Shown here one piece after another: positions 23,768-46,166 of a stretch of DNA of 64,000 nt. The stretch is from Fimbriosthenelais zetlandica. Lineage: Eukaryota. The translations under genes and the position numbers were made by a program. The stretch covers positions 33,480,001 through 33,544,000 of the forward strand of contig OZ365113.1 of the NCBI GenBank assembly GCA_977030845.1, given 5' to 3'. Below the pieces are notes generated by a model, which ran no database searches, was not told the DNA's origin, and saw only the letters and a list, made by a program, of their open reading frames with translations. The stretch's first letter is position 1. Every line of letters begins with the position of its first letter.

Positions 23768-26736
23768 GTAGGTACAAAGTTATCAATCACGCTGGTTCTA
23801 GCCGCAGCCAGCCAGCCTCACTGCACGAAATAAGGTACATACACCACTCCAGATTGTCTCATATGATATCCATCCCTCAAATGGAAAGCTATTTGGTGTT
23901 GCAGTTTTGGCCATCGATTCTAAAGGCTCTTAGGTTTTCCTTACGTAATTACGACAGGTTTCCTATGGTTTTAAAGTAGTCTTAAAAGAATATGAATCAA
24001 TAAAATCGGTCCCTATAAGAAAGCTTCGTAGCCAGGCTTGGAGGATTGCACTGCATGCTCCTGATTTCGTGCATTGGTACAGCAGTGTATATACTCTCTG
24101 TCTGGGAGTGTTCTTTATGGACTGTAATAACAGTACTAGGATTCTCGCTTAATGAATTGGCATATAAACCCACTGAACTCTGAATCGTACTTCCCTGCCT
24201 TACACATATCTCTTCTGGATTATACCCTCTGCTACTTTACTGCAGCAATTGGACTCTACAGAGGACCACTCGGTATTATGGCCTTGACTATAAATAGCTG
24301 CCGGGCCTGGACAAGTAACAGTCGACACTTAGTTTCAGTCTTTAGGCCATAATTTCATAGAATTCTTTTCTTCAAAAGATGCTTTGAAATCAAATTTTCA
24401 TATTGCTCAAAGCCAATTCAGAATAAAGGAACAGTTTTGTTCACTGCGTGCCAACTTATGGCTGCTGCAAAACGGGAATGGGCCGAGTGATAGGACAATA
24501 AATGGTTCCCACAAGAAAATGTCGTCTGCCCATTATGATAAATGGCACCCATAAGGTCCCAGGCTGCTCATATAAGATAGGTACATTCCAGGCTAGTACA
24601 GGCAGCCGAAAGTCTGATATATGCAATGTTTGGGGCCTTTCGGGATATTACCCCCAACAATATGGGAGGCAAAGAGCTGGCCTGAAATATGACATTGCTG
24701 ATATTTCCGGCTGAAAGACTTTGGTGGGATTAATGGCGATGCAGGGATAAAGAATGAGTTCTTTATTGATTTGGAAGCCATTTGTAAGCTGTCAGAAATG
24801 TCAATTATGGGGGCAGCATAACGATAGGCGGAGGCCGGCTGGACAGACTGTTAATTCAGACCAGGAAGGTAGCCAACCATTGAGTTATGACATGCGGGAG
24901 TATTTATCACTCGTAACGATGTGATGATTTTACTAATGATCCAATGCATTTGGCAATTTTGCTAAAACTGGGAACCATGGCTGCAGACAGGCTCCTGACT
25001 TTAAAACATTAAGCCTAACAAAATCTATGTCAAAGTCAGTTATATTTGGGACCTGCATATGCCTTTATTCACGTTAATGTTAGATTTATATTAATTATTA
25101 TGTTGGTTCTTTTCAAATAATATCCATTGTTACATTTTCCATCGACTCACTGCCAAATAGATATCATAAAGGAAAGAAAAAATGGCAGTAATGAAGGAGA
25201 TACATTGTATTTGGGTACCAGTACGTTTCCCTTTGTTGCTAATACATTGGTGGGCCCGGAAGCTCCTGAAACCACTCAGGATCGCGGAGTCAGACAAGAA
25301 GCCATTACCAGGCCGGCTTCCCTTCCTCCTTGGCTTCTATATTCCTATCGTCTGTATTCTAGAAGAAGGAATTCCTCAAGCTCATCCAAAACCTAGTATG
25401 GAGCTAGGTCCAGCAATTGCCTTCATCCTAGCAATTGCTAATTCATTACCTGTTATTCAGTACTAAGCCACTCATCATTGGCAATTACTGTGGTACAGGG
25501 GACGTAGATGGCAGAGTTAATGGTATCTGCATAGCACAAGTATCAATAGATAGCTTTCTGTTGGCCTAATGGTCTTAAGGCTGTAAAGTACCATTGCTTT
25601 GCCATGAGAAAGGGCAGTTTTTCACCAGCTTTGTAGCATTATGGACTTTTAAAATCAAATTGATTCAGGTAAATGCCATTTATTGTGATGCTTTATAATT
25701 ATTGAATACAATGAAGACAAAACAAAAAGGATAATTGCAGACCAAGTTCAACTTTTCATAGAGTGCCTCACACTGTCTCTAGTTGAACTGGAGGACAATC
25801 AACAAAGGGAAAAGGAGCATTTGCCCACAGAAAATGGCTTATCTGAAAACCAGGCAGAACTAAGAGGCAGTCCAAAGTAATCTGCAATTGCTCAAGCACA
25901 TAGCGGCAAGATCTGATCAATGTGGGCCTTTTTTTGTGTAGTTTGCTGCAATCCAAGAGAAAATCCATGCCTTGACCAGCTCACATTTGATCAGCCGATG
26001 CCATCAAGACCAGTTTCACCAAAGAATCTCCGAATTTCTTTCGACAGGCAATGTGAATACAATCATATAGACCTAATGTGTAGTGGGATGAAACGGGTAA
26101 CCGCGGAGTTATCAGGGGTGCATACATGTCTTAAAAGTCTCTATCGGATCTAGGTCAGGCGATTTGAGATGGGATGGATGGAGAGATAGAGACATAAAAT
26201 AGCACTAGAATATTGAGGCATTATGATCTCAAGGTAATCAGCTGTGAAGCTATGTGCGATCGATGGAAGCTTGGTATTTTTAAAGGACTCATTGCATGAG
26301 GGAACCCACCACCCTCATAAATGCTAAAGCATGAGCATGTATTATCAAACTGACACACGCCGCTATTCTATTGATTTTTCGACAGCTGTGAGGTAGAAAA
26401 CTTAAAATGTGATTTGGCAGCTCAAAATTGAACTAATTATGCTCAAAGTAATCTGTATTCATTGCATGTTCCCAGGACCTACCTTCTCAATTATCATGAC
26501 AAATTTATTGTCAGAGCAGCTTTAAATTAATCTACAATTTCACCCGAATTTTGATTGAGTTCTAAATTTAGGACAAAATATGCCAAACTTGGCATGATTT
26601 TGAGCGAGATCTCCGAGACTTTGAGATGCATAGAAAGCCTGCTTGCCATTCATGCTATTTATGAACCTTTTGGATGTGATTCTCTATTCATTGACCTGTC
26701 ACCAACATAAGTCTTCTTCTATTTTCTTCTCTCTAG

Positions 26737-27899
26737 GGTTTATCACCATTGGCATTCCTACAGTACAACGTGAAGGAGGCAGCTACCTCCTCAAAACCAT
26801 CGACTCCCTCATCCGGCATACATCCGAAACAGAAAAGATGGAGATTGTCATTGTCATCTTACTGGCAGATCTGGATGCCAATACACGACATCAGATGTCG
26901 ATGATTTTACACAGAGCCTATAGGACCTACATTGATGATGGCTTCATACAAATTATAGCCATCAACCGGGACTTTTATCCACCTCTGAGGAATTTAGAAC
27001 GGACATTTGGGGATTCAGAAACTCGAGTGAGATGGCGCTCAAAGCAGGCCATAGATTTTGCTTTCCTCATGCTTTACTGTTCGAACATATCAGAGTACTA
27101 CATGCAGCTAGAAGATGATGTGATTTCCACGCCCAATTTTCTCAATTCCATGCGGGATTTTATCGTTCGCCAGTCAGATCCCTGGGTGTGTCTGGAGTTT
27201 TCACACATGGGATTTATAGGGAAATTCTATCGCTCCAGACATTTGCGCAAACTAGCTATGTTCATGAGGAATTTCTACTCTGAGCAGCCAGTAGATTTCC
27301 TTTTCAGATACTTCAACGTCCTTATGACCCAGAAGACCTCTATTATGAGGACGCCATCTTTATTCCACCATATCGGAGTGGTGTCCTCTCTGCCAGAGAA
27401 AAACACTGGCAGGAAATCGGTGGAGGACATACAAGATGCCTTGCCAAAAACACATAATGGAGACAACCCTCCTGCTGATATCAGTACCAATCTAAAGACA
27501 TTCAAAGCTTACACAGTTGACCTTGCTTATCAGAAGACATCCGGGCATTTCTGGGCAATGGCGCCGTCTGGTGGCGAGGCACTGTTTGTGGCTTTCCAGG
27601 AGCCAGTGCGCTTGAAAAGAATAGTGGTTGAAACGGGTTCGGAGCGCCACAAAGAGGACCTTTTACAGTACGGGAAGTTGGAGGCCAGCCCTCGAATGAT
27701 ATCTCGCCTGGAGGACGGTAGGGTGCTGTGCACTGATTACACATACCTGGGGGCATTCCAGAACGGACGCGTGGATGTGGACGGCTTAGATAAAAGACTT
27801 CCCTACGAGATTCACTGTGTGCGCATTTCAGTAACGCAGGCCCAAACTTCCTGGGTGCTGATTAGGGAGATAGCCGTGTTCATCATGAAAGATTCGTGA
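26737..27899 (+). CDS. MGAT4C: Alpha-1,3-mannosyl-glycoprotein 4-beta-N-acetylglucosaminyltransferase C-like (GT54): catalytic and C-terminal lectin domains in one terminal exon; full model about 470 aa
   Basis: Acceptor CTTCTCTCTAG|GG TTT ATC. Motifs ITIGIPTVQREGGSYL, RVRWRSKQAIDFAFL, YYMQLEDDV, WVCLEFSHMGFIGKFY, PSLFHHIG and NPPADIST...HFWA match the MGAT4 family. The first 31 aa of the tracked ORF (26643-26736) are intronic. Confidence 0.93.
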
Positions 27900-29144: not shown

Positions 29145-32100
29145 TCACGAATCTGTCCTGACCTCCCCCTCGACCTTCTGATGCAGTTCCTCCAAGGCTT
29201 TAGGATCTACAACCAATGAACCCCTTCCTATATCGTGTGAACCCCTTCTAATGTCAGTTGAACCCCTTCTAAAGTCAGTTGAACCCCTTCTCATGTCTGG
29301 TCCTAACCTTGCCTTAATCTTGCCTTCAGCTGAGCCTGTTCTGTTCCGTGTGTTAGGGTTGAGGGTGATGGCAGGATGCACTGTCACTGTCTCCCGGAAG
29401 GACGGGTTGTCCACACCACGACTTTTGCCATTTTCTTCTTCTTCCTGTTCCTCCAGAATTCCTGCCAGATCCTCTGGTCTATGACCTATCATATGTAGAG
29501 GCACCTTGTCAATTGTTCCTCCCAGGATTTTCCCTAAAAATGAGAAATTCTCTGAAGTAGTAAAGGTTATTTCCACAATTATGCATCTAAGAATGAATCC
29601 TGTTTAGATGCATTTGTTGTTAGGAGATGTGTTAAGATGGTTTGTGAATGTGTTATTGCACGATATCAAGCAGACATCATAGCTAAAATGATAACATACT
29701 ATGTGTCCTTTCCCAACAGTAACACGGGGAATTTTGGAAAATTACTGCAACTTTAAATTAAAAGAAATGGGAACTTAGCCTACTTACCCGCAGAACCATA
29801 CTGGATGGCAATGCTGCTCCTCTTCAGCCCTGGATCTTCATGATACATTCCAAACACACTGTCTACTGAGGATCTCTTTCTGACTCGGTCAACAGCATAC
29901 ACCTAAAACCAAAATTTTATTTGTGAGTGAATCCACCTCAATGCCATTTGACCATGCTCCAACTGAAAGTGGCAGGATTTGTTCTATCAAATTATATTAA
30001 TGATCCCAACATTACATTCGGTAGTGCCAATGCAAAGCAATTATATCAGGATTAAAATCGAAAAGAATGATTTATTCTTACGTGTGCTTCGCCTGCTTCT
30101 TCTTCGTCTTCAATATTCATACAATTATCACATGCACAGCAAATAAAGCAAGGCCTGCACTTCCGGTGATAGGGGTATAACAAACTGAGGTCCTGCTTTT
30201 CCCGCTGGTCATTGCCACCTTATTAATGGAAACAGAGCTTAGTTATCGTGAACAAATGGACAACTGAGCATCAGCGAGGTATCAAAAACGAAATTCTAAC
30301 GTTAAGCGTTTCATTTGAATGCCGCGTTTCCAAAAAAGCGAAAACTCAATGCGGGTCAATGTCCTTCCCAGAATAATTCATAGGCAATTGCGCACTGAAG
30401 TTGGAAGTTTCTTTGTCGGGATCGAATGACACTCAAAAGGTTAATTGATATTACATTGCCCACGATTCTTCATTAACTTCTAGGTCTCCCTGAACAACCA
30501 GGCATTTTTAAGCAATTCTTCCATGCAAATTCCTGCTTTTTTTAATCTGGAAATTTTAATTGTGCAGGTAAAACGTTCCTACCTGTTAAAAGGCTGGTGG
30601 GTATGCCAATGAGTAATGAGACAAATACAGACAATAGAGCATACCACATGTATGACACCGAATAGAGATCCGATATCACAAAACTGAAAAAAGAGCGACA
30701 TATCTGATTAGATGCAGTCGATGGCAGTCAAACAGGGCTACACATAGGAATTGACCCAATTCCAGATTGAGCATGGTGAAATAGCTTAATATCAGTAACA
30801 TTGATGCTCTACATTACATTCAGGCCACATGGATACTTTATTGCAATAATAGGAGGTTTGATCAGACTATTAAAAGTTGACCCGTACTTTCCAGAGGCCT
30901 CTGTGACGTTGTTTTCCACTACAGTAAAGTTGAAAGGACATCCATCCGTTCGTATTGGCAGTGGCGTTTGTTCACTAGGATACAGTATACCTCCGATGGT
31001 TATCCAAGATGTGATTACAAGACTACCTGCTGTCCCGAAAAATGCCCCCTACAACGAACAAGAGACAAAATAGTAGTCAATTGAACGTGTAATTCACCTT
31101 AATATAATTACATCAACAGCATTGCCAAAAACCCCAAACATTGATTCTTTCATTCATTCATTCATTCATTCATTCATTCATTTTTACATCAATATCATTT
31201 CTAGATATTCATTTTCCATTAGGTGATTTCATGAATCAATATAGGACTCACCCATTCATTAGCAAATGGGAAAAATATTGCCAGGATGAAGAGTCCCAGC
31301 AATGGGCCGCCTATCATACCGAAGAGAGATAGAGCCGCTTGGATGAGGGTGGAACCAAAAAGGGGGATGAGGAACGCAAGAGCCATCGTCAAGAGACCAA
31401 AGACCACAGCTAGAAATAAAGATGGAGCAAGAAGTTAGAAACCTTCCAAATCATCTCCCAAAAGCCTCTTCTCCTCCACTCTTGTCGCTCGCTTGGCATC
31501 AGGGATTGCATCGTTCAATACGAGTAGTTTGCACCGGCTATATTTTGCATTTACTAAAGGTGGTGGCCACTTATTTCCCATTGGAAGCTGAAACATTCTG
31601 AATGAATGGGAGGCTTTTCATCCATTGTTCTTGAAATATAGATAAAGATTTCTATTTTGAAGGGAGATACTTGTTATTGTGCCAATATAGAACTTGAGCC
31701 TCTTCTAAATGCCAAGCAGACATATATATCTGCCTCCTACAATGGATAAAAGGTTTCCAGACTGTTGAAAAACTCACAGAGTAGTTTGGCCAGCCTTGCC
31801 GCCTGAATGTCTGGCATTTTCCTCATCTTGTTACGTCTATATATAGGGAGGACGATATCGGCCATGGTGACTGCAGCCAAGGAATTAACTCCTGATGAAA
31901 CAGTGCTGAAATTGAAAGGGAAACATGCATCTAAGTACCAAAGAAAAATCACTCATCAAACTGCCTCAAAATGTTTTAAAATGTTATCCTTGATCCTTGA
32001 TCGGAATAAGAGAACCTTCCTGGGATATATTGCTTTAAGTGGACTATATCTCATGAAGTATAATTCACAGGGTTCTACTTGTTCTTAAAGGGTCATCAGC

Positions 32101-35100
32101 CTGATCTTCAATATTTAATTCATACCCTGAGGGGTTTCCTAACTGCATAGCAAGCCATCATTCATGAGTCTGCCACCTGTTGTACAACACTTCTAAGTGT
32201 ACCCCTTTAAAAGGTAGATCTCACTCAACAACCATGACTTGGTATGCCACACACGGAGTGCACATATACAAAGGCCATTGTCACCAAGCTGACAGGAATA
32301 CCAAGATGGCCTTTTGTTGCTTAAAGCTGTGGAGGCAAGGCATTTGACTCAATGGCAAATGCTCTAAGAATCACCAGTGTCACCTTATGTAAAAGCTCAA
32401 TATTTTACCATGTTGTCTGAACCCATATTATAAGGAATTTAAGTACCAGTGAAATTTTCTCACATTTTCTCTTAATTCTGAACTTTCATTGGGCAATGAC
32501 TTCTTCAATTCTGGAATTCATTGCTTGAAACGTTAAATAACTAGTTGATACACAGAATTTGTCCCCCAAAGGTCATGATTAAAAGTGCATTAGATGAATT
32601 GTACTGGCAGGACCTTCACTATGGCTGAAACATATTTACACAGGTATATAGGGACCTGTCACATCTGCAATGGTAAATGGATCCCATGCATATAGGAAGC
32701 AAGGGGGCATCACATCAGGCCAATAATGGCCAGGCCAAATGGGAGCCTTTATCATATATCAATAAATGTCCTACCTCAGTGAAGCAGCAAAAACCGAGGC
32801 GGAGAAGAGACCTGGAAGCCCGATGACATCACCAAGTGAATCCATAACGAAGACAGGGACCAACTGATCCTTATTGTGGATCCTGCCTGTCGCTACAGGG
32901 TCGCAGTCATGATAGAAAGCGAACATAACGAAGGCCAAGATCAGGATCATGAATGTGTAGGTCACATTGAGCGCACCAGCATAGTAAACCGACCTATATT
33001 GGACGATGGGATATAATAAAAGAGATGAGGCATTTAAAAGAGATTATCGTATCCTTGGTATGAATTATGTGTGAGTCACAATGGAAATAAGCCATTATTA
33101 ATACACCATCTATGATCTAACAATGACTTCAGTTCTCCCCTTGACTTCCTCAATATTCAGAAGATTTTTCATATCTCGACCATGCACGAGGTCTTGCAGA
33201 TCAAATGACTGGTTCAGAAGGGACATTAGCAATGCGAAGTATATGGTTAATATTCGTTTTGAAATTGTTCTGGGCCCCGTTTCATTATCCCTGTATAATG
33301 TTGGCGCAGGTATTTACATCCCATAAAATATAGAAACCCTATGGTAAAGGGACTAAAGTGGAGCAGCTGATGTGGCAGACGTTTTTATGGGTGTTGATAA
33401 ACAGGCCCCAGGTCTGATGGACTAATAGCTTAAATTGAGGAGTTTATAGAAAATTTAATGCATTGGGATGGACTAGGGGATAATAATGGGTATAGCATTC
33501 TGATCTAAAGTGAAATAACATATCCTATAGCTTACTTTTGGGCATCCTTGGTTGTTTTAACACTCAGATATCGCTGGATCATTGCCTGATTAGTGGCAGT
33601 AGCTGCAACAGTGATAACGAAACCACCGATGATCTGAGTCCACCATGTGTGACGGGCGGAGGGGTTCAGACTCCACCTGTTTAACAAAACTCACATTAAA
33701 AGTTTGAACCATACTATCGTATCGTTCAGACTAAATTATTTTGCAAGCAAAAACAAAATATAAGACCAGGGTCTCTCACTTAGGTTTGCTCGGGGAGATT
33801 ATTGATGTTGCAAGGGGCCCTGCACTGTGAGCCAAAGTTTAGGACCCCTTACAACATCAAGAACACCCAGAAACCCAGTCCCACTTTAATGCAAACACAA
33901 TAATAATAATAGATAGACTTTAGTAAATCATTGGGGAAAGGAAGTGTGGACATTTTCAGAACCTGTTACTTACTCATCAGTCTGAAGTCTGTCCCCTTCA
34001 ATGACTCGGTCCCAGACCGTGTCAGGGCCACCTACGTCCACTGTACCCTTTATGATCAATGCCAGAATTCCCACAATGATGATGATGGTTTGTACAACAT
34101 CAGTCCAGACAACTGCCTTCATTCCTCCCTGAAAACAGTCAAGACATCAATAATAACATTAATCCCAACTCCCATCTCTTCCCCCAGCAATTTCATAAAC
34201 ACAATGGCATGAATCAGTGACGTGGATGCAAAGGACCTAATCTGGAAGTTCAGCCATCAAGCAATTGGCGTTTTCAAGTCCTGGCTCTAAAGGTTTTGAA
34301 ACGGTTGATTGTGATTCCAATGCATAACTTTCCACCATGCAGTTTTGGTGTTTTGTTCGCGCTGATGAAGTCAATCCAAAGTTTCTCTGCAAGAGGCTAA
34401 TTTGTTTGGTTCGAATATTCAATATAACTGGAAGAGCTGCTGACAAGAGCTAATCAAAGCTTTCCCCATGGCTTGCATCAAGTCATGTTTCCCAGGCATG
34501 AAATTAAATCCATGTCCATTCAGGCTTTTATGGAGATATTGATATTCATTCAATGGCAGGTCTCCAGTCGCTTACAATGCCTGTTAACATTTCATTGTGG
34601 GCTTTTAAAACCTGTCACTCGAGTGATGAAGCAAATTCACTGCCATTTTGAAGGTAGAATCAGCAATATTTTCTGATTAAATTTCATGCTGAAGTCAGGA
34701 TTTACCAGGATACAATGCTTCATTTATTTTAAAAGTAAATTAATATTATGAAGGAATATGATTGTTATGTAATATAACAAGACTTACTAATGCTGTGTAA
34801 ATTGTACAAATGATTCCAACCCCAAGTATAGATGCCAAGGTGGGTAATCCAGTCACTATGAATAGGAAAGTAGGCAATGTTTTATTTGAAATCAGTGAGA
34901 AATTGAGGCAATAATTCAGTCTGGCTTCATGAGATCCAAAGACCCTTAAAGTAATAGCCCTTTAAGGCATTAAGCTATATAATTAGAGTAGTACTAGGAA
35001 AGGTCATTAGCTATTGCTGCAGTAGATGCAGCATAGCATTAATGAGCCTTCCTATACTATACTTAAATATGCGACACTCTGAAAGAAAGAAATTAAGAAA

Positions 35101-36458
35101 ATTTGTTCTCTTGGTTATTTAGGTAATTTAAAGCCACTCAGATAACCATGATCCTTATCGTAGTGGCAGGATTTCAATTGGTGTTTGACGTATTTATAGC
35201 TTGTAATAAGTTGATAAACTTGGTCTCAACATGTGCTTGAGTGATAATGGGTATTTATTCTATACACCAATATTATCAATCCTCCCAAGTGTTTGAGAGT
35301 TGTAACAAATACTGGCAGACCTTTAATAAAAGGAATTTCTGATTTCTGTAATCAGTATATAATTAATTTTATTTTATACACCATATATTAGCCAGAATCC
35401 TTAATTTTCCCATCTTAATTATACGCTTTATTTATTAGACAGATTGATGAAAATATATAATCTTTCCTTTACCTTGTGCAAAAGCCACAGCTGGTGCATA
35501 AATAACCACAGCCATATATAGCAACTGTTGGAAATAAACAAATCTTCAAGACACCTCAATAACATACATGTACATAACCTTGATTAAATAGTATTGTCTA
35601 TTCAAGAATAATATGACAATTTCTATCACTAGATTTGCAACTCAATATTGTTATTGAACTGGAATATCCATGACCTTTTATTATTGACTTCAGCTTATGG
35701 CAAATTAGGTTCTTTAAGTATGTACATACCATCATTATTGAGAACAGACATGATCCAAACAGTCTCATCCAGTGGCTGAATCGCTTCTCGATGAACTGTA
35801 TAAAAGAACATACTAATCTTAAGTTTTGCATCTTGCATATATTATTAGAAAACAAAACATAAATTTGTTCATTCCTAATTCTTCATAAGACATCTATTTC
35901 ATAGTAATGAAGCTTAAGCTGTAAATGGTACCTCATAAGCACTTGTCATTTGTTGGGCATGGAAGACAGGCACAAATAGATGTGCCGTTATCGGTGTTGC
36001 CACAATGTAGCCCAGAATGATAGCTCCATACATGGATCCATACGTATACAGCTCAGCTGGCGTCCCCAGGATAAAAGGGGCTGACAAGAAAGTTGCCAGA
36101 AGGCTCAAGGCAACTGGAAAAGGCTATAAAAATAAAAATATTTAGAAAATTAATTTTCAAATTGATTATGGTTTGGTAAGAAATTGGTTTCTGTTTGGCG
36201 AGGAAAATTAATTATTGGATTTTTGAAGACATGTACTGGTGAGAATGTTACCTTTAGGTCATTGCCACCCAGTAGTTGTCTGGAGAGAACTGATTTAGAC
36301 CAAAGTGATCCTTTCTTTTCAAACTTGAGATCTGCCCAGTCTTTGGCACCAGTAAAGATGCCAACAAAGAGGGAGAGAATGAGGGACAATGTAAAGATGG
36401 TATAATCCAGCCAGTGAAATGTCCTCACTGTCTCCTCTATGGTGTCCGTAGTTGCCAT
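29145..36458 (-). CDS. SLC5 sodium:solute symporter (SMCT/NIS/SMVT-like), paralog A, about 779 aa
   Basis: 15 exons with consistent phases: 36458-36252, 36123-35932, 35795-35730, 35524-35473, 34855-34788, 34128-33974, 33676-33536, 32993-32775, 31905-31778, 31409-31252, 31048-30837 (alt donor 30888), 30683-30583, 30218-30082, 29902-29788, 29533 (alt 29551)-29145. Family motifs: PVALSLLATFLSA, YAPAVA, GGMKAVVWTDVVQ, NQAMIQRY, DQLVPVFVMD, GLPGLF, STVSSGVNSLAAV, GGPLLGLF. Confidence 0.93.
29217..29291 (-). repeat. Coding tandem repeat, 21-nt period, 4 copies (RRGSTDF-RRGSTDI-RRGSHDI-GRGS)
   Basis: TGAACCCCTTC recurs at 29217, 29238, 29259 and 29280 in the last exon of SLC5 paralog A. Confidence 0.9.
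31149..31182. repeat. (TTCA)n microsatellite, intronic
   Basis: About 8 perfect TTCA units. Confidence 0.95.
32085..32210. mobile_element. Short TTAA-flanked element with AGGG...CCCT termini (Kolobok-like MITE remnant), intronic
   Basis: TTAA-AGGGT ... ACCCCT-TTAA, 126 bp, same terminal architecture as 18206-18292. Confidence 0.35.
33802..33860. repeat. Palindromic dispersed element, copy 2
   Basis: TTGATGTTGCAAGGGG ... CCCCTTACAACATCAA pair at 15/16. The interior GGCCCTGCACTGTGAGCCAAAGT is homologous to copy 1 at 23351-23403. Confidence 0.75.
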
Positions 36459-36935
36459 CTTTTCCTGAATATTTAGTCCTCAAAATGTCTCAAATTCCTT
36501 AACGTGGGGCTGTACCTTATGCAGTATACTTAGTGCCCATCATAAGGTGATTTGAACTGTCTATAGTCCTACTACTTTATTCAGTCCAATCCCGTCCATG
36601 TAAAAGTCCTATAGTTGTTTTCTTTTATCTTGGAAAACAATATGAAATCAATTAGGATTCCCCAGCATTCGGGTCATGCCATATTGCATGAACTAATCTA
36701 CTATTGTTTTCTCTGTATTTTCTTGGAATCCCTTTCCTCCGTTTTGAAAGGTTTGAAAGAGTACACAACCTCAAGAGAAGTCAGTGCCTTTAAGCGTGTT
36801 ATCATGATGATAAGTCCTCTAACAATGATAAGATTGGAAAGTGTGACTGGACTGATCCAATAGGTTACTGTTCGATAGGCCGAGTGGCATTGATTCGAAT
36901 GAAAGTACTTGTCTTGTATTCTCTCTACCAATTGA

Positions 36936-37041
36936 GGGGCCATTCAACTATTACGTAACCTGAGTGTGGATAACATTGAGTTACGTCCCAATCCGTACAA
37001 TATTGCGTAACGTTTAAAGTTGTGTAATTTTTAAATGGCCC
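36936..37041. mobile_element. MITE with imperfect ~25-bp TIRs (PIF/Harbinger-Tourist-like) in the SLC5 intergenic region
   Basis: Left end GGGGCCATTCAACTATTACGTAAC; right end reverse-complements to GGGCCATTTAAAAATTACACAAC. Flanks TGA/TAA resemble a TWA target-site duplication. Confidence 0.5.
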
Positions 37042-38138
37042 TAAGTTCATATGCCTATGGATGTAGATTTTACTATTATAACTTTACTACATGTACTATT
37101 ACTTTAAAGATTATCTTACTACTTTTCATTGTGAAACATAATAATTACTCAGATTCTATTTACTTTAAGGAAACTTGGGAGATGAAACATTTCTGATAAA
37201 AAGGGATAATTAAACTGATTACATTCTCTGTTATCTCGTTTATGTGTCTTGAATACCTCACATCATGTATATTTCATACACTGACGACAATATCACCTCC
37301 AGTTGTAAATCATACATTTAATTATGTCCTTGAGAACGGCTTCCACATTATATAAACTTCCCTATACTATATTTACAATTCTTATTAGAGTTTGAAGTCC
37401 GTACGATCTCGGTAGCACATACGATTCCTTTAAGAATGTGTGTTGGTTCAAACATGCTTTGAAATTCAAAAATACACCAACACATCAAGTCTGAAAGGAA
37501 AACAAATGATGAAAAAGTTATTATTCCTTTCTGTTAAAGATTTTTTCTCGAATCCAAATACGTCAATCACCTAATGGCCGTAACCGATAACCAGTCTTCC
37601 ACTAGCAGTTCAGATTAATCCGCCACTCAAATTCCAGTCAGAGTGACTCCCCATTGCAGCACAGAAGCCCCGCCATTGTTTTAATTTCATAATATAAAAA
37701 CATCCCCTCTTTGCCCATTGACGTATCAATATTTGTTTACCGCGCAAACTGTAAATTGTTGAGTTGAATGAGGATCCAAGGACATGGTCGATGTGAAGAG
37801 GCTTAGGTTGGAAGCCATCGTGATTTACTGTGTAAGAGAGATAAGAGAGGTGAAGAAAGTCTTGATAAGCTGATCAGAGTAATTAAATCTTGTGAGGGTG
37901 GAGGTCATTGTATTTAATCTCCGGTTGAGAAGATAGACCGTCTTGACATTGTCTGAACTCTGTTTCTAAAAGGCATCATAAACAACAATCGCTTACGTCA
38001 TTGCATGCCAAGAATGGGCGACAGAAGACAATGAAATTGGTTATTATATATAGTGAAATCATCAAATATTTTTATGATGAGCAATCTAATTAAAGTGTGT
38101 TTATTTTGAATTTAATGAGTTATTAGTGGAATAAGTAT

Positions 38139-38162
38139 CATGCATGCATGCATGCATGCATG
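38139..38162. repeat. (CATG)6 self-complementary microsatellite
   Basis: CATG x6, about 280 bp upstream of the paralog B ATG. Confidence 0.9.
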
Positions 38163-38445
38163 ATTCCCAATGTGCATAAGCTTAAGTTTTGATATGAAAG
38201 CCTGACAAGAATTCATTTGTGATAAACTATATACATTCAACTAAGTTAAAGCTCCACTGGATGGGCATCTCAGTGGTTCACTCACAACCTTATCTTCGTT
38301 TGACACCTTCCCTTAGAAGGTGTTACTGATAAGTATACATACCTGGAAATTCAGAGGGCATGTCCCTTGTCTTGCCGATAACACCACCTAACTCGTAGAA
38401 AAAGGGCAGTTCTCTTAATTTCTTTAATTCAGAAGGTCTTCCATA

Positions 38446-41400
38446 ATGACAGCTACCGAAGCACAAACCTTTCATTGGGCTGATTATTTAGTTTTTGCCG
38501 TAACTCTGTTGCTTTCTGCGGGAATCGGTGTCTATTATGGGGTGGTGGATTTTAGAAGGAGGGCTCTTCGAAAGAGGCAAGCCAAACTAGATCCGACTAG
38601 GGATATCCGACGTGGATCTGGCTTAAAAAGACAGCTGCTTGGAGGACAAAACATGTCAGTAAGTATCGTTTCATCAATTCATTCCTCCATACTTTAATTA
38701 CAACTCTTAGCTTTGTAGAGCACAACACAAAAGCGCATCAATCCATCCATCATTTTCCCAATGCATCTATTTATCTATAAATCTACCTTTATTCAAAAGC
38801 AATCAATTAAGTGTTCTTCCATTACAGGCCTTCCCAGTTGCCATGAGTATACTTGCGTCGTTTCTATCAGCTCCTTTCCTTCTTGGAACACCGACAGAGT
38901 TTTATCTGTTTGGATCTATGTATGCTGCGAACCTGCTCGCCTATCCCTTCAGTGCCACTATTACAGCCTACCTTTTTGTACCCATTTTCCATCGCCAGCA
39001 GGTGGCTAGTTCATATGAGGTAATTACATGACAACTAAGACATAAATCAAAAGGTTAGACCCCACTGGTATTGGCAAGAGTGAGAAATCAATTTATGTCG
39101 TGGGTAGTTCGCTGAACACATCGCTTTTAGATACAAAGTAACAGGTTTCTGTACCTTGGTGGTACACACATGTCATTATCTGTGGCAACTAACTATTACA
39201 TGTAATGACTTGAATGTTGCTTATCAGTGCCATAAATATACACAGGAGATTCAAGGCAGAAAAATACAATGTTGATCCTCAGTGTCAGAAAACCCAGACA
39301 CTGACAAGCTATTTTCAAAAGTATGTATGCAAAGCAGAATGAAACAGGATGACATTTTTATAATTTCAGTATCTTCAGAAAAGATTCGACAGGAAAGTAC
39401 GTCTCCTCAGTGCAATAACATTCTGCCTGATGATGGTAAGTATTTTAGGGAGTAAATAACATAAATATTCAGTTGTAACCAGGCGCCAGTTAGAACATAG
39501 GCTTGTAATGATTTGGAAGAATTGTATATATTATTTAAAGAGTAATTTGTTCTTCTAACAGACGATGTATATGGGTGTGGTGATTTATGCCCCTGCTGCT
39601 GCGTTTTCATTAGGTAAGTACACTGATAATAGTTAAAAAATATATTTTTGTCCATTCTTATAGCTACTATACTTGATTATCTAATCTTTTTTAATACAAT
39701 GAGTTTAAGGGTTGTAAAATAGTCCAATTTGTAACTTAGAATTGGTTTGGAAAATAGCATCTACGTATTTGGAAATGAATTTATCCTCCGAACTTCTGTT
39801 TCTTTTCTTTTAGTAACGGGACTCAGGACAGACTGGGCTATCCTTGCAACAGGGCTGATCTGTACATTCTATACAGCATTTGTAAGTATCAATATTGAGT
39901 ACGACATATATTAATCAGTCCGCTTGAACTGGGTCACCACAGGCCTGTATAGCATGCAAGAGCTGTTATACAGATGGTACTGTCCGAATGTCGGTACTGC
40001 CATCTGTTGATAAGGAAAACAACTCAAGTACATGTACATGTACCATGCTTATCACTAGACCATGTAACTACAATGTTCGAATGCAATGCTGTCAGTTTAC
40101 TTACTCGATTATTATTTCATATTTTCAATTGTGTTTCAGGGAGGGATGAAAGCTGTCATCTGGACTGATGTCATCCAAATGATTATCATCCTAGCAGGGA
40201 TGGTTGCATTGACTGTAGTGGGTCTCATAGAAACCGGTGGACCCAGTGAAGTTTACAATAAAGTCATGGAAGGTGGAAGGATACAGCTAGATATGTAAGT
40301 ATGAAGTTCATCAAAGGCTATAGAAGTCACTGAAAATTCGACACCTTGATTCAGATCATTCAACCAGGAGATTTGGCCAAATTTATCTGTCTGCATATAT
40401 TCTTCTATAGCCTACATAAGAACCTCTGATATAGGAACCTGCTACCGGTTTCAAAAGTCTCAAAATGAATATTAGCTATGATAATATGATGGTTACAGGA
40501 TCTCTGGCATTATAAACTGGCACTTTAAAAGTTCTGACACACATTAGCAAATATACAGATTCCTAACATATTAAATTTCTTTTTTTTCAGGAAAAGTTTA
40601 TCTTTAGACCCAACTGTACGTCACACATGGTGGACTCAGGTTGTGGGCTGTATCTTCCTCAACCTCTCTCTGTCTGCCACCAATCAGGCCATGATTCAAC
40701 GCTACCTCAGCATCAAGACTCTCAAAGAAGCCCAAATGTGAGTATTTAGTAAATCAATGAAGCCAATTAATGATCTCCAGAAAATATAAGTTAATTGAAT
40801 ATGATACCCAGAAGCAAATGCATCATTCCTCTTCAGGCTAACAATAAGGCTAGAAAATTGATTACCACTGAATACTGAAAATTGTGTTGCAGCAATGAAT
40901 TTAAATGATTTCGGAATGCTTCACATCAGTTTTCCTTTCTTCCAGGTGCTGTTTCATGGCTTTAGGTGTCTTGGAGGTGTACCTGGGGCTTGTATTCGTC
41001 ATGGGTTGTGTCATGTTCGCCTACTACTACGGATGTGATCCTCTGACAACAGGAAAAATAGACAACAGGGACCAGCTCATGCCTGTCTTTGTCATGGACG
41101 TCCTGGGCAAATGGGTGGGACTTCCAGGACTGTTCACCTCAGCTGTCTTCAGTGCATCCTTAAGGTGATTATATGTTGTGACTAACATATGTCTGATATT
41201 CATTGACAGATTTAGGGGAGGTCCGGGGGTAGAACCCCATTCCTTTTATAGACCTGACTCCCAACCCTTACCCCCAGCCTCTTGGATCCGAAAATCAATC
41301 CAAAATACAAAAATGGATCCTCCCCAGACCGTTGGTTGAGACGAAATGACACCCTATAGTGTCATGATTATGCCTGATGTGATAACAATTTTTTATATGA

Positions 41401-43395
41401 AATTATTTTCCATTTTCAGTACGGTATCCTCTGGTCTCAATGCCTTAGCAGCTGTCATCATAACTGATATGATTCATCCCTTATATTACAAAGTAAAAGG
41501 CGATATTATGGCCGACAATGTTTCATCTATCGTTTCCAAAATTATCAGTAAGTTTTTGAAATTCATATTTATTGCCATTCTATTCAATTTCTCTGAACAG
41601 CAACTATTCAAGAATTGAGATATCCATTCATCCTGACTACTTTAACCATCAATATTATCATTTTCATATCCAGGTTTTACATTTGGCTTCATCACCATTG
41701 CCATAGCGTTTGTGGCACCCTATCTAGGAAGCACATTATTGCAGATTGCCAGTAGCTTGTTTGGTTTAATCGGTGGACCACTTCTTGGACTCTTCTCCAT
41801 GGCTATGTTCATACCCTGTGTGAATACATGGGTTAGTATCTATTATTCCCAACAAATGCTTCAAGGTCCATTTGTTGCATCTTGAAAATAATTTTCCAGA
41901 ATTTGTCTGTAGAAACACGAATAAAATGTCATCAAATTTCACTTCTAAAAAGTTAAAAATGTTTGCCCTTTGACAGGGAGCATTGTCAGGCACAACCTTC
42001 AGCCTTTTATTCACGGGATGGATCGCTTTTGGCAGTTTTGTTTTTCCAAACCTTCCTGAGAGACTGCCCCTGGAAACATTCGCCTGTCTGGCTGACATTA
42101 ACGGAACAACAGCAGCTTATGTCAGTACCATGTCAAGTATAATGACTACAACTGACGTACTACCAGATCCTCAAGGAGGGGGCGGGTGAGTAGGCTGTAT
42201 ACGATCTATAATAGGTCATCCAAGTGTCCACCCAAGGGGAGGTCCGTTGGGTTAGCCCTGTACACTTCTAGAACATTTTTATTGCTAAAAGTGTTTGGGC
42301 CACAAAGCTGGACCCCCCCCCCCCTTATGAAACTACCCTAAACTTAATTTATATTTTCCATATTTCAATTCATAATTTTAATACTTTTATTCTTATTTTC
42401 TTACGTCAGAATCAGTGAGATCTACAAGTTGTCCTACATGTGGTACACACTCACTGCCTGCCTAGCTTGTATGGCAGTTGGTATCCCAGTCAGCCTTCTT
42501 ACCGGTAAGCCTAAAAAACATGGACTAATTATAGATTTTTGCACCGTTTTCAGTTATGTATTGGGGTAAGAACTAAAAAAACGATCCTCTTGTTTTGTTC
42601 AAGGTGGAAACAGAAATAAATACGTGGATCCTAATCTCCTTTTCACCTATGAGCAATCATGTTCCTGTTGCATGAAGCTCTCTTGCTGTAAATCGGACCT
42701 TCTGGGGACGAGAGAGCCAGAAATGACTCCAAGTGAGATTGATGAGGAGGAAAAGAGGAGACAGAAGGTAAACTTTAATGGCTACAATTGTTTTGAGGCT
42801 TGAGGCATATAGGCCTAGGTCTATGAGATGTAAACAATGGCTTAATACCCTCCTGGCTTCATTTGTTTAGTATGTCTTTGCCTATTATCAAAATCATGGT
42901 TTCTGTTATTTTCTTTCTCAACAGATGAGGAAATTCTCCACCAAATCAGTTGTAACCTTCGCAGACGAGGATGAATCTTTTGACGACTCCACTTCCGGTA
43001 TTGACGTTGGCTCGGATGTTGACAACGCTTCTGATCAAACATTGGATGACGTCACTTCCGTTGAAACGTACAGCGACCGCGAGGATGTCTACATAATCTC
43101 CGATGGCGCCCTCTACAGGAAACAAAGTGAACTTTCAGACATAGATCTTATTGGTCATAGGAGAAGGGACTCTCAAGTTTACGAAGACATGATGCGAAGA
43201 AAGAGCATAGCCATAAGCGGGATTCTCAATCACTCGTTTGCAATAGAGGAAGAGCCCGAGGAGAGTGAGGAAAAGGCAAGAGTGCATCTAAGACCAACTG
43301 TTATTGACGGGAAACGAGATGAAAAACAAAATTATCAGAATAACTGGGATGATACAAACAAGGCTAATGGAGATATAGGCCACACGTGGTTATGA
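38446..43395 (+). CDS. SLC5 sodium:solute symporter (SMCT/NIS/SMVT-like), paralog B, about 778 aa
   Basis: 14 exons with consistent phases: 38446-38658, 38828-39019, 39370-39435, 39562-39613, 39814-39881, 40140-40294, 40591-40737, 40946-41164, 41420-41547, 41674-41831, 41977-42185, 42410-42504, 42604-42767, 42925-43395. Same SLC5 motifs as paralog A (GGMKAVIWTDVIQ, NQAMIQRY, DQLMPVFVMD, STVSSGLNALAAV). Exons of 192, 66, 52, 68, 155, 219, 128 and 158 nt are identical in size to those of paralog A. Confidence 0.94.
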
Positions 43396-44107: not shown

Positions 44108-46166
44108 GTAAGTTTGTGTTCAATTCTTAATTCAACCACTTCACCAAATTAATATTAATTAACACAGATAGTCATATTTAGATGCAGTCTATAGGTACTA
44201 TTGAGAACCAAGATAATGTATGAACATTTAAAGCTGGGACTCAATGAATACTGTACCTATACCTGCTTCACAGGTAGATTAGTCATTTACGGTAGTGTAC
44301 ACACATGTGCCATATTAAGCTTTGCATGAGTTACCAGTTACACAGGCCCCCAAAATAGACATATATCTCAACTTGGATATATTACATTTGGAAATCATGG
44401 CCCATATTTCAAGGAACCTTCCATGTTCATGGAATTTCTCTTCCTGACACAATAGAACCCCCGGGAATTTTCACCTCATGGGAAAAAAGGTTATTACCTT
44501 GGTCAGGGTCGGGTTTATTGGTAATCTTATGCTGATAAAGTAGTGTTTACCAGTCACCGCTCTTCCTGCTAAAGTGATAAAAGCACTAATGTCAATAACT
44601 TGATCTATAATACAGAATGACCTAAAAATGGTTTATTCATCCTCAGGAATTGAATTGTACATGTCCAAAAACTAAAGACAAAATTCTGCCAAGTAAATCT
44701 ATGGTAGAAAAAAATCCATTTTACAATGGACAAACGTACATTACACACATTAGCCTATTGTTTTTTATTCCATTTTAGAAAAAGGTATTTCTTCGCATAC
44801 TTGACCCCGGCTATATTTCCATAGACAAATGTTATAGTTGATAAAATATAAATCAAATAAATCTAGGATTAGAACGAATAATTTTAAGTCATAATCTGGA
44901 AAGCCCCAGCGTATGACAATGAGATAAAGTTAGTTAGCTTGGGTATATCTATTTCATGCCATTGAAATAAGAAACTCCTCGATGGGTTTAGACCAAATAT
45001 GTGTGTAGGTGGGTCAAGATGACTCAGGCCTAAAAAGCCCTGTGTCTATGTATTCTGATGTATTATACACACATATGTATATACCTCACTCCTATAGTAG
45101 GACGTGCATCGTCTGCTTTACTCCATTGATCAAACAATCTAAGGACCGTAAGCTCTACTACCTGCTATAATAACACACCTGTGAAATAATCCAGGAACCA
45201 AGCATTGCAACAAGCTGTTAATTATAGCACAAAGGTAGGACTGGCTCATTAAAGCTAAAGTCGGTATAGCAATTGTTTTTATTCATATCATTATTAGCAT
45301 GCTTGGGTTTAAGTAAGGATTATTGTACTGAGCTGTGCTGAACTGAGGTGGCCGTGTTATTCTTGGCTCGGTTGAATGAAAATGATGTTTTTGTGTCATG
45401 CACATAATGTGTATAATTATAAGCCTAGCTTAGTTATATATACCCTTATAAGGTATAGTCTGTTTGGCCGAATTATGTCATTCCAGTTTAACCCACATGT
45501 TAGAGCAAAGTATTACATTAATCCAAACATGAATATTATAGATGAGTCAAAAATGACGAAACCGTATTTTTTCACATTTATTCCCTATTCATACCTTTGT
45601 GACACCACCTGGAACAAAAAGGTTATACGTTTCATTTCCTACCCACAAGGGTTTGCAGGAAGTGCAGGTCAAGAAGGGTCAGATACGGTCGCATTGAAGT
45701 GGGGACCTCGCTCTCTGTCTATGTTGTTCATATGAATATTATAGAAATATTTCAAAAATGAATTTATATATTATGGATGGATATCATGGGTGATTTTCCT
45801 CGGGAGGCATGAGTGGAGAATGCCTTATACAAGGTTAGCTGTAGAGATATGAATGGGAGATTGATTATTTGGAGGAATTGATGTGAATCATGTTGGATCT
45901 GATTGATGAATGTATAGAGGAAGCATGTAGAAGAATAGAGAACAAGGTTACAGGTACGGTCAACATAAACATCAGCTGGTCCACTGTAACACCTGGACAG
46001 CTCCTAAAATCAGGCTCTTGACTCATTCCAGTTATTATGCTTAGGGCATACAGTGCTTTGTTGAATGAACTACTTTTCTGCTGGTCGACATTATTATATG
46101 ACTGATTTATCAAGAAAAATTCTTAGAATTCTTTTTTTCTTTTCAGGCAGACGTAGGGGAGTCAGG

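What the first reader, a model, noticed from the sequence alone, without database searches (positions are those of the whole stretch)
33536..36123. Remodelled substrate pocket in both SLC5 paralogs suggests an undescribed substrate or a sensor role
Seen, by-eye alignment to human NIS as remembered. The unwound-helix motif SFMSAVQVLG becomes TFLSAPFILG (A) and SFLSAPFLLG (B), so V71 becomes P and Q72 becomes F. TLVWLSMYGVNQ becomes FVITVAATATNQ (A) and IFLNLSLSATNQ (B), losing the aromatic W255 and Y259 equivalents. The G93/Q94 position is G-Y in A and A-Y in B. The Na2-site S-T-x-S-S motif (SLSTVSS) is intact in both. Established: Q72, G93, Q94 and W255 shape anion binding in NIS, and the Y259-equivalent aromatic contacts substrate in SGLTs. 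Drosophila SLC5A11 (cupcake) is reported to act as a nutrient sensor. Inference: these are Na-binding SLC5s with a reshaped pocket and large regulatory tails, i.e. a novel solute specificity or transceptor subfamily.
Basis: partly seen in the sequence, partly recalled or inferred. Interest (0 to 1): 0.7.

Follow-up and report, generated by a model that had tools for sequence, protein, structure and literature searches.

The report
Divergent invertebrate SLC5 transporter gene pair
Two neighbouring, intact animal genes encode sodium-driven transporters of the iodide/vitamin/short-fatty-acid branch of the SLC5 family with an unusual proline-phenylalanine in the substrate-binding kink; this marks a small orphan subfamily of unknown cargo, and nothing points to a sensor role.

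Summary
Gene A (minus strand, 15 exons, 762 aa) and gene B (plus strand, 14 exons, 778 aa) lie head to head. They share exon structure and are 46% identical.

- **Substitutions.** Against solved NIS, SMCT1 and SMVT, both genes read F-L-S-A-P-F in the TM1 kink. Both lack the TM6 Trp and Tyr. Every sodium-site residue checked is kept.
- **How unusual each change is.**
  - The Pro is special: 1 of 230 full-length relatives has it, and 0 of 28 other paralog exon-2 copies read in this genome.
  - Phe at the Q72 position is a minority state shared with sister lineages.
  - The Trp position varies across the family.
  - The Tyr is also lost in three other paralogs here.
  - Tyr at the Q94 position is the family norm.
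- **Clade.** A, B and one metatranscriptome protein (P0263) form a well supported clade inside a spiralian-only radiation. The A-P-F motif is invariant in it, and its C-terminal tails are long (about 210-250 aa against a median of 79).

**Verdict:** these are probably working sodium-coupled transporters of an orphan subfamily with an unknown, probably altered cargo. The sensor idea has no support. No expression data could be obtained. Interest is modest.

The parts
29145..36458 (-). Gene A, SLC5 NIS-clade paralog. It has 15 exons (36458-36252, 36123-35932, 35795-35730, 35524-35473, 34855-34788, 34128-33974, 33676-33536, 32993-32775, 31905-31778, 31409-31252, 31048-30888, 30683-30583, 30218-30082, 29902-29788, 29533-29145) and encodes 762 aa.
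   Evidence: The model was built by hand from tblastn hits and GT-AG sites. All introns are GT..AG. The first 10 junctions align without gaps to the mRNA-derived P0263 and P0129. The donor of exon 11 (30888) is uncertain because four candidates exist. No RNA evidence was obtained.
38446..43395 (+). Gene B, paralog of A. It has 14 exons (38446-38658, 38828-39019, 39370-39435, 39562-39613, 39814-39881, 40140-40294, 40591-40737, 40946-41164, 41420-41547, 41674-41831, 41977-42185, 42410-42504, 42604-42767, 42925-43395) and encodes 778 aa.
   Evidence: Exon lengths match A for exons 2-6 and 8-10. B is 46% identical to A over 647 aa. All introns are GT..AG.
36064..36093 (-). Gene A TM1 kink, TFLSAPFILG. 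Pro sits at the NIS V71 / SMVT V83 position and Phe at the NIS Q72 / SMVT A84 position.
38858..38887 (+). Gene B TM1 kink, SFLSAPFLLG.
33586..33621 (-). Gene A TM6 unwound segment, FVITVAATATNQ. Thr sits at the NIS W255 position and Thr at the NIS Y259 / SMVT Y271 position. The N-Q pair is kept.
40652..40687 (+). Gene B TM6 unwound segment, IFLNLSLSATNQ. Asn sits at the W255 position and Ser at the Y259 position.
31893..31905 (-). Gene A TM8 sodium-site motif, S-L-S-T-V-S-S. The second half lies here; S-L and two bases of the next Ser codon lie at 32775-32782 in exon 8.
   Evidence: S365, S368 and S369 equivalents are kept.
41420..41432 (+). Gene B TM8 sodium-site motif, S-L-S-T-V-S-S. The second half lies here; the first half lies at 41157-41164.
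29145..30218 (-). Gene A cytoplasmic tail, exons 13-15, 212 aa after TM13. It holds a juxtamembrane Cys cluster, an acidic run, and three RRGS plus one GRGS repeats at 29217-29291.
   Evidence: No Pfam domain was found.
42604..43395 (+). Gene B cytoplasmic tail, exons 13-14, 210 aa after TM13. It is acidic and Ser/Thr-rich.
   Evidence: No Pfam domain was found.
36459..38445 (.). The 1,987-bp spacer between the two divergently oriented start codons. It may hold a shared promoter, which is an inference only.
   Evidence: Coordinates come from the gene models. It was not analysed further.

Best explanation
A and B are an old tandem, head-to-head duplicate pair of intact genes. They encode sodium-coupled secondary-active transporters of the 'NIS clade' of SLC5 (SLC5A5/6/8/12-like).

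**Clade.** They belong to a small subclade of a spiralian-specific radiation, here called the A-P-F clade. It is defined by:
- Pro-Phe at the start of helix TM1b;
- no aromatic residue at the TM6 Tyr position;
- C-terminal tails of 210-250 residues.

**Mechanism (inferred).** Sodium binds at the conserved Na2/Na3-type sites. The solute binds between the TM1 and TM6 kinks, and the protein cycles by alternating access like SMVT, SMCT1 and NIS.

**Pocket (inferred).** The anion-anchoring elements of this branch are kept: the kink Ser, the TM3 Tyr, and the TM1b helix dipole with free backbone NH groups. The small residue that makes room for a carboxylate in SMVT and SMCT1 is replaced by Phe. The TM6 wall is made of small or hydroxyl residues.

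**Cargo (inferred).** It is therefore most likely an organic anion that differs from the short monocarboxylates, vitamins and iodide of the characterised members. A and B have probably diverged from each other in selectivity, because they differ at the pocket positions aligned to SMVT 102, 267, 270 and 428.

**Shown here:** gene integrity, family and clade membership, residue states, and the fold of a clade member. **Inferred:** transport activity, the nature of the cargo, and any role of the tails.
For: **Family and fold**
- PF00474 matches exons of both genes above its cut-off.
- The best solved relatives are SMVT, SMCT1 and NIS.
- The AlphaFold2 model of clade member P0263 (residues 1-600) has pLDDT 88.6 and pTM 0.87. 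TM1 breaks at L63-S64, so the Pro is the second residue of TM1b.
- Foldseek's top hits to that model are NIS (TM-score 0.93) and SMCT1 (0.92).

**Intact genes**
- There are no in-frame stops and all 27 introns are GT-AG.
- The junctions match mRNA-derived homologs.
- The two genes are 46% identical with the same exon structure.

**Transport machinery kept**
- The equivalents of S74, S81, Y156, D203, N274, Q275, S365, T366, S368 and S369 are all present in A and B.
- TM10 reads I/L-Q-x-A-x-S-L-F-G as in SMVT and SMCT1.

**Clade**
- IQ-TREE gives (A,B) support of 100/97 and +P0263 100/96. The group is nested in an 18-row spiralian clade with support 100/99.
- A-P-F is invariant in 10 sequences that are only 35-65% identical.
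- P0263 comes from an intronless 3,365-nt metatranscriptome contig, so a clade member is expressed.

**Why the pocket matters**
- In SMVT the substrate carboxylate sits in the TM1 kink, on the NH groups of S81 and A84 and the OH of Y156. The two terminal kink residues are proposed to set specificity, with a small residue (A84/T70) for carboxylates (PMC13454448).
- Y271 contacts pantothenate.
- Two TM6 substitutions are enough to switch NIS selectivity (bioRxiv 10.1101/2025.10.07.681042).
Against: - No transport, expression or localisation data exist. No RNA run was listed for this genome.
No model coordinates were available, so the pocket geometry rests on alignment alone.
- The TM7 mapping is ambiguous.
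- Phe at the A84 position also occurs in sister proteins that keep the TM6 Tyr.
- The TM6 Tyr is also lost in other paralogs of this genome. Each change may therefore be tolerated without a change of cargo class.
- TM6 pocket residues vary within the clade (T/S/L/I at the Tyr position). This could mean relaxed constraint rather than a designed pocket.
Confidence: 0.55

Rival explanations
1. A and B are ordinary sodium-coupled monocarboxylate transporters, functionally SMCT-like. The kink and TM6 changes only tune affinity or kinetics.
For: - Public annotation calls all nearest relatives 'SMCT1-like'.
- The carboxylate-anchoring elements (S81, Y156, the TM1b N-terminus) and the TM10 motif are conserved.
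- Molluscs have large SMCT-like expansions that are interpreted as monocarboxylate carriers (PMC11939762).
Against: - The annotation rests on similarity only, and A and B are not orthologs of vertebrate SLC5A8/12.
- The small TM1b residue proposed to make room for the carboxylate (T70/A84) is Phe, and the TM6 Trp and Tyr of SMCT1 are absent.
- In NIS, two TM6 changes alter selectivity.
Confidence: 0.2
2. The cargo is not an anion. It is a neutral or cationic solute such as a sugar or polyol, or a quaternary-amine osmolyte, and it is held partly by the two aromatic kink residues (F...F).
For: - The SMVT paper states that CHT1 carries two aromatic residues at the two terminal kink positions for cation-pi binding of choline. 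A and B have F and F there.
- The TM6 wall of A is rich in Thr.
- A Drosophila protein named SLC5A5 is reported to mediate glucose absorption (PMC8617630; title and abstract only).
Against: - The other aromatic cage residues of CHT1 are not evident, and TM6 has lost its aromatics.
- The NIS preprint's alignment gives Ala, not an aromatic residue, for CHT1 at the Q72 position, so the analogy depends on the alignment.
- Every functionally characterised vertebrate member of this branch named in the sources read here carries anions.
- The F...F pair is shared with sister 'I-F' proteins of unknown function.
Confidence: 0.12
3. A and B are transceptors or sensors. They bind sodium and a ligand but signal through the long cytoplasmic tail instead of, or besides, transporting.
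For: - The tails are about 2.7 times the family median.
- A carries four tandem R/G-R-G-S motifs.
- Drosophila cupcake (SLC5A11) is required for food selection (PMC8790523, citing Dus et al. 2013).
Against: - All sodium-site and gating residues are kept, as in working transporters.
- The tails have no known domain and are poorly conserved between A, B and P0263 beyond the juxtamembrane stretch. That pattern fits disordered regulatory or trafficking tails of ordinary transporters.
- No feature that defines a transceptor can be read from sequence.
Confidence: 0.07
4. One or both genes are unexpressed or decaying copies of a large, fast-turning-over family.
For: - No RNA evidence could be obtained.
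- The genome holds more than 30 paralogs, including tandem arrays.
- TM6 pocket residues are not conserved within the clade.
Against: - Both reading frames are open through 14-15 exons with canonical splice sites.
- At 46% identity, all conserved functional motifs are still retained.
- A clade member is found as mRNA.
Confidence: 0.03

Closest known systems
SMCT1 / SLC5A8 (PDB 7SL9), sodium-coupled monocarboxylate transporter
   Same: - It is the best full-length solved match to clade member P0263 (E 8e-118), with Foldseek TM-score 0.92.
- It shares the kink F and S, the TM3 Tyr, the TM6 N-Q pair, the TM8 S-L-S-T-V-S-S motif and the TM10 L-Q-A-A-L-S-x-F-G motif.
   Different: - V-T70 at the TM1b start becomes P-F.
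- The TM6 Trp and Tyr are replaced by T/N and T/S.
- The tail is about 210 aa; the family median is 79, and SMCT1's own tail was not measured.
- A and B are not orthologs: they sit in a spiralian-only radiation.
SMVT / SLC5A6 (PDB 26va-26ve; PMC13454448), sodium-dependent multivitamin transporter
   Same: - It is the best match to exon 2 (E 1.8e-11).
- The equivalents of Y99, Y106, Y156, S74, D203 and S365 are kept, as are the TM10 pocket residues L424, A427 and F431.
   Different: - Q80 becomes L, V83 becomes P and A84 becomes F.
- M266/M267/L270/Y271 become I/T/A/T in A and L/N/L/S in B.
- The carboxylate niche at the A84 position is therefore bulkier.
NIS / SLC5A5 (PDB 7UUY, 7UV0), sodium/iodide symporter
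   Same: It shares the fold (TM-score 0.93), the kink F67 and S69, Y144, and the TM6 N262-Q263 pair.
   Different: Of the eight iodide-site residues (Q72, V76, M90, Q94, W255, V293, L413, F417), Q72, V76, M90, Q94, W255 and F417 differ in A and B; L413 is conservatively kept (I in A, L in B) and the V293 mapping is uncertain. S416, a sodium-site residue, also differs. NIS is the least apt reference for TM2 and TM10.
Spiralian 'SMCT1-like' expansion (for example Dreissena P0198, Owenia P0073, Lineus P0303, and the JGI proteins P0129 and P0258; razor-clam ScSMCTs in PMC11939762)
   Same: - They share the radiation (15-row clade at 96/92 and 18-row clade at 100/99).
- They are 40-48% identical to A and B.
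- They already lack the TM6 Trp, and some carry I-F in the kink.
   Different: - None has Pro at the V83 position, and those shown keep an aromatic residue (Tyr, or Phe in P0253) at the TM6 Tyr position.
- Family tails are generally short (median 79 aa).
- None is functionally characterised as far as the papers read here show.
Drosophila cupcake (SLC5A11), proposed nutrient sensor
   Same: It belongs to the same superfamily, SLC5.
   Different: No sequence feature linking A and B to it was tested or found. The comparison is by analogy only.

Membership tests
SLC5 / sodium:solute symporter family (Pfam PF00474 SSF) | Match to the SSF profile above the curated cut-off | tested here: met
   A six-frame search of the window's own genome hits window exons of B (C19:33520119-33520394, 38.1 bits) and of A (C19:33513946-33514137, 32.5 bits). 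The cut-off is 22.8 bits. P0263 carries PF00474.
SLC5 / sodium:solute symporter family (Pfam PF00474 SSF) | LeuT-type fold with unwound TM1 and TM6 | tested here: met
   This was tested on clade member P0263 (44-46% identical to A and B), not on A or B themselves. The AF2 model has pLDDT 88.6, with helix breaks at residues 63-64 and 257. Foldseek gives TM-scores of 0.92-0.93 to NIS and SMCT1.
SLC5 / sodium:solute symporter family (Pfam PF00474 SSF) | Conserved sodium-site residues (TM8 Ser-x-x-Ser-Ser, TM1 Ser, TM5 Asp) | tested here: met
   The equivalents of S74, D203, S365, S368 and S369 are present in both A and B. They are 98-100% conserved in 230 relatives.
NIS clade of SLC5 (SLC5A5/6/8/12-like; named in PMC9309457) | Closer to SLC5A5/6/8 than to the SGLT or CHT1 branches | tested here: met
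   PDB E-values for P0263 are 1e-106 to 1e-118 for SMCT1, SMVT and NIS, against 1e-17 to 1e-26 for SGLT, vSGLT and CHT1. Exon searches hit only SMVT, SMCT1 and NIS.
SMCT (SLC5A8/12) orthologs | Orthology with vertebrate SLC5A8/12 | tested here: not met
   A and B sit inside a spiralian-only clade, and vertebrate SMCT1 (P0247) lies outside it.
SMCT (SLC5A8/12) orthologs | Small residue (T70) at the TM1b start, with the TM6 Trp and Tyr | tested here: not met
   A and B have F at that position, and T/N and T/S in TM6.
SMCT (SLC5A8/12) orthologs | Na+-dependent monocarboxylate transport | not testable with these tools
   This needs a functional assay.
NIS (SLC5A5) | Iodide- and sodium-site residues Q72, Q94, W255, S416 and F417 | tested here: not met
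   The corresponding residues are F, Y, T/N, A and L/S in A and B.
SMVT (SLC5A6) | Vitamin-pocket residues Q80, A84, M266, M267 and Y271 | tested here: not met
   The corresponding residues are L, F, I/L, T/N and T/S.
A-P-F clade (proposed here) | Ala-Pro-Phe at the TM1b start | tested here: met
   The motif is invariant in A, B, P0263 and seven fragment clusters. It is absent from 229 of 230 relatives and from the 28 other paralog exon-2 copies read in this genome.
A-P-F clade (proposed here) | Monophyly | tested here: met
   Support is 100/96 for A+B+P0263. The fragments were not placed on a tree.
Transceptor / nutrient sensor | Ligand-dependent signalling independent of flux | not testable with these tools
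   There is no sequence criterion for this. The tails have no Pfam domain.

The most novel reading that the evidence does not exclude
The A-P-F clade has left the anion-carrying habit of its branch. On this reading, the proline-stiffened kink with two flanking phenylalanines, together with a small, hydroxyl-rich TM6 wall, binds a neutral or cationic solute abundant in marine invertebrates, such as an osmolyte or an opine-type metabolite. Alternatively, the proteins work mainly as tail-signalling transceptors.
Probability: 0.15. Interest if true: 0.55.

Novelty: new member of a known kind. Interest (0 to 1): 0.3.

Why it matters
If the A-P-F clade has its own cargo, it would be a natural experiment on how the TM1 kink sets specificity in SLC5.

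- The Pro sits at a position that is I/V/L in 97% of relatives.
- A Phe replaces the small residue thought to make room for carboxylates.
- The near-universal TM6 Tyr is lost.

Swapping these residues between A or B and SMCT1 or SMVT would directly test the 'terminal kink residues decide selectivity' proposal of the 2026 SMVT structure paper.

More broadly, the result is a caution. Similarity-based 'SMCT1-like' names in invertebrate genomes hide dozens of paralogs whose pockets differ. For physiology the value is modest until a substrate or an expression site is known.

Tried and rejected
1. **Profile search with exon fragments.** I aligned the window's exons as fragments to a full-length scaffold to drive a profile search. 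MAFFT misplaced the fragments (alignment A1), so the alignment was not used.
2. **Expression evidence.** Two searches for sequencing runs listed none (an earlier try, did not complete). Read laying was therefore not used and the splice junctions have no RNA support.
3. **Orthologous loci.** P0001's contig has no DNA on offer. L041 holds only exons 1-2 within reach, and L042 is a near copy of L001.
4. **Metagenome scan.** A scan with the A-P-F pattern found only P0263's own contig.
5. **Tail domains.** Pfam found nothing on the tails.
6. **Protein Atlas.** The search returned only the family name.
7. **Organism.** The neighbouring MGAT4C-like ORF has its best named relatives at only 48% identity, in hemichordates, so the phylum is unresolved. 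The SLC5 tree suggests a spiralian.
8. **TM7 pocket mapping** (SMVT Q301/L305, NIS V293). MAFFT and HMMER disagree by a 3-residue gap, so this mapping was dropped.
9. **Aromatic swap.** I considered that Phe at TM1b replaces the TM6 Tyr. Sister proteins carry both and no coordinates were available, so it remains unconfirmed.
10. **SGLT comparison.** From memory, the SGLT Tyr may align one residue earlier.
11. **Folding A or B.** The tools take only contiguous window references, so the spliced proteins could not be folded.

Full report
**What is at the locus.** The window is part of a 447-Mb, 79-contig eukaryotic assembly (C19:33480001-33544000). The finding's range, 33536-36123, runs exactly from the end of exon 7 to the start of exon 2 of a minus-strand gene. 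I built both gene models by hand from stop-to-stop frames, tblastn with full-length homologs, and GT-AG sites.
- Gene A lies at 36458-29145 on the minus strand. It has 15 exons and encodes 762 aa.
- Gene B lies at 38446-43395 on the plus strand. It has 14 exons and encodes 778 aa.
- The two genes lie head to head, 1,987 bp apart.
- Exons 2-6 and 8-10 have identical lengths in A and B, and the proteins are 46% identical over 647 residues.
- All 27 introns are GT..AG.
- The first ten junctions of each gene align without gaps to two proteins that come from mRNA-like contigs.
- The exon 11 donor of A, in a variable outer loop, is uncertain.
- No RNA run was listed for this genome, so the models lack direct transcript support.

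**Check of the observation.**
- V71 becomes P and Q72 becomes F in both genes.
- W255 becomes T in A and N in B.
- Y259 becomes T in A and S in B.
- G93/Q94 read G-Y in A and A-Y in B.
- The TM8 motif S-L-S-T-V-S-S is intact.
- All motif coordinates were re-translated.

**How unusual each change is.** I collected 230 full-length relatives and aligned them with A and B.
- The V71 position (V83 in SMVT) is I/V/L in 224 of 230 and Pro in one.
- The Y259 position (Y271 in SMVT) is aromatic in 229.
- The Q72 position is T in 149, A in 44 and F in 13.
- The W255 position is W in 129 and M in 40, and otherwise mixed.
- Tyr at the Q94 position is the family norm (93 of 136; SMVT has C-Y and SMCT1 has T-Y). 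That item is therefore a peculiarity of NIS, not of A and B.

The genome itself holds at least 33 exon-2 copies of this branch, of which 30 were read.
- Only A and B read S-A-P-F. The other 28 copies read show T, M, S, F, Y, L, G, A or V at the Q72 position.
- Of seven other paralogs whose TM6 exon was recovered, three also lack the Tyr (I, I, A) and four lack the Trp.
- Pocket divergence is therefore the rule in this expansion. Only the Pro is unique to the pair.

**The clade.** A scan of 1.8 billion cluster representatives with exon 2 ranked sequences carrying A-P-F at the top. They are exon-sized fragments from unannotated assemblies. One full-length member then turned up, P0263 (807 aa). 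It reads FLSAPF in the kink, Leu at the Tyr position, and has a 247-aa tail. It comes from an intronless 3,365-nt metatranscriptome contig with an upstream stop, so a clade member is expressed.
- In an IQ-TREE analysis of 45 sequences, A and B are sisters (support 100/97).
- P0263 joins them (100/96).
- The trio sits in a 15-row clade (96/92) within an 18-row clade (100/99). The named members of those clades are all spiralians: annelid, nemertean, bivalves, gastropods and a rotifer.
- Vertebrate SMCT1 and SMVT and a NIS fragment lie outside.
- A-P-F is invariant across ten sequences that are only 35-65% identical in this exon.
- A partial locus from another assembly (L001) has A-A-P-F and Ile at the Tyr position.
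- The nearest sister proteins carry I-F with the Tyr kept (P0129), or V-P (P0258). The Phe is therefore older than the clade, and the Pro and the Tyr loss are its own.
- The whole spiralian radiation already lacks the TM6 Trp.

**Is the machinery intact?** The equivalents of S74, S81, Y156, D203, N274, Q275, S365, T366, S368 and S369 are all present in A and B. These include the TM8 serine whose mutation most impairs SMVT, and the Ser/Asp pair near its second sodium site.
- TM10 reads I-Q-A-A-L-S-L-F-G in A, like SMVT and SMCT1. The NIS-specific S416/F417 are absent.
- An AlphaFold2 model of P0263 residues 1-600 is confident (pLDDT 88.6, pTM 0.87).
- In the model, TM1 breaks at L63-S64 and TM1b starts at A65, so the Pro is the second residue of that helix. 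From general knowledge, proline is well tolerated in that position.
- Foldseek matches the model to NIS (TM-score 0.93) and SMCT1 (0.92).

**What the changes could mean.**
- In the 2026 SMVT structures the substrate carboxylate inserts into the TM1 kink. It is held by the backbone NH groups of S81 and A84, the hydroxyl of Y156 and the TM1b dipole.
- The authors of that paper propose that the two terminal kink residues set specificity. A Phe plus a small residue (A84/T70) would suit carboxylates, Q72 suits iodide, and two aromatics suit choline in CHT1 (PMC13454448).
- Y271 contacts pantothenate.
- In NIS, two TM6 substitutions next to W255 abolish iodide transport but keep oxyanion transport.
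- A and B keep the anchoring elements but put Phe where the small residue should be. They line TM6 with small or hydroxyl residues.
- I therefore infer a working sodium-coupled carrier whose cargo differs from the characterised ones and is still most likely an organic anion.
- A and B differ from each other at several aligned pocket positions, which suggests divergence after duplication.
- All of this is inference from alignment. No coordinates were available and A and B could not be folded.

**Tails and the sensor idea.**
- After TM13, A has 212 residues, B has 210 and P0263 has 247. The family median is 79, and only 5 of 136 relatives reach 150.
- The tails have no Pfam domain and align poorly beyond a juxtamembrane stretch.
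- A has a Cys cluster and four tandem R/G-R-G-S motifs.
- This pattern fits disordered regulatory or trafficking tails. It neither supports nor excludes signalling.
- The cupcake analogy is not backed by any tested feature.

**Verdict.** The amount of remodelling is overstated by using NIS as the reference, and the sensor reading is unsupported. This is a new member clade of a known family in a genome where such paralogs are numerous, so interest is modest.

Noticed in passing
window 26643-27899 (+): A single-exon 418-aa ORF of the MGAT4 family (PF04666/PF23524 in its hits) runs convergent with the 3' end of gene A. Unnamed relatives reach 94% and 81% identity, but the best named ones reach only 48% (hemichordates). 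The organism's phylum is therefore poorly represented among annotated genomes.
   Followed up: partly
window 46065-48161 (+): Four long open frames encode leucine-rich repeats followed by a hydrophobic segment. This is probably an LRR transmembrane protein gene downstream of gene B.
   Followed up: no
window 36459-38445: Genes A and B start 1,987 bp apart on opposite strands, so a shared bidirectional promoter is possible.
   Followed up: no
window 29217-29291 (-): The tail of gene A reads RRGSTDFRRGSTDIRRGSHDIGRGS, which is three RRGS motifs and one GRGS motif in tandem. B and P0263 have no such array.
   Followed up: partly
window 30082-30218 (-) and 42604-42767 (+): Both tails begin with a Cys-rich stretch just after TM13: CRPCFICCACDNC in A and CSCCMKLSCC in B. 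The Owenia relative P0073 has a similar cluster but P0263 has none. These are candidate lipidation sites, by inference only.
   Followed up: no
G000 C21:5.08-5.76 Mb, C11:45.35-45.36 Mb, C10:50.776-50.788 Mb: The genome holds at least 33 exon-2 copies of this SLC5 branch. They include tandem arrays: five copies on C21, three identical exon-2 translations on C11, and a pair on C10.
   Followed up: partly
L034 (C19:39015310-39015435), L035 (C19:5889819-5889953), L040 (C27:12030428-12030553): Three other paralogs of this genome also lack the near-universal TM6 Tyr (I, I, A). Their kinks differ from A-P-F where the matching exon 2 was read: V-L-N-A-V-A at L020 (same locus as L034) and F-I-S-A-I-Y at L010 (same locus as L035). 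The exon-2 copy of L040's gene was not read.
   Followed up: partly
window 40974-40976 (+): Gene B has a Glu inside the predicted TM7 (GVLEVYLG) where A has Val. This is a buried charge near the pocket region. Its position relative to the pocket is uncertain because the TM7 alignment is ambiguous.
   Followed up: no
L001 and L042 (ENA ERZ22147071), L041 (ERZ25069859): The A-A-P-F subgroup from other assemblies has exons 1 and 2 fused into one exon, and its introns are much longer (exon 7 lies about 9.7 kb downstream of exon 1). L042 carries a reverse-transcriptase ORF upstream.
   Followed up: partly
PDB 9zfl: The engineered 'PF-NIS' carries L253P/V254F in TM6 (bioRxiv 10.1101/2025.10.07.681042). 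This Pro-Phe pair lies in a different helix from the natural A-P-F kink, so the shared letters are a coincidence.
   Followed up: partly
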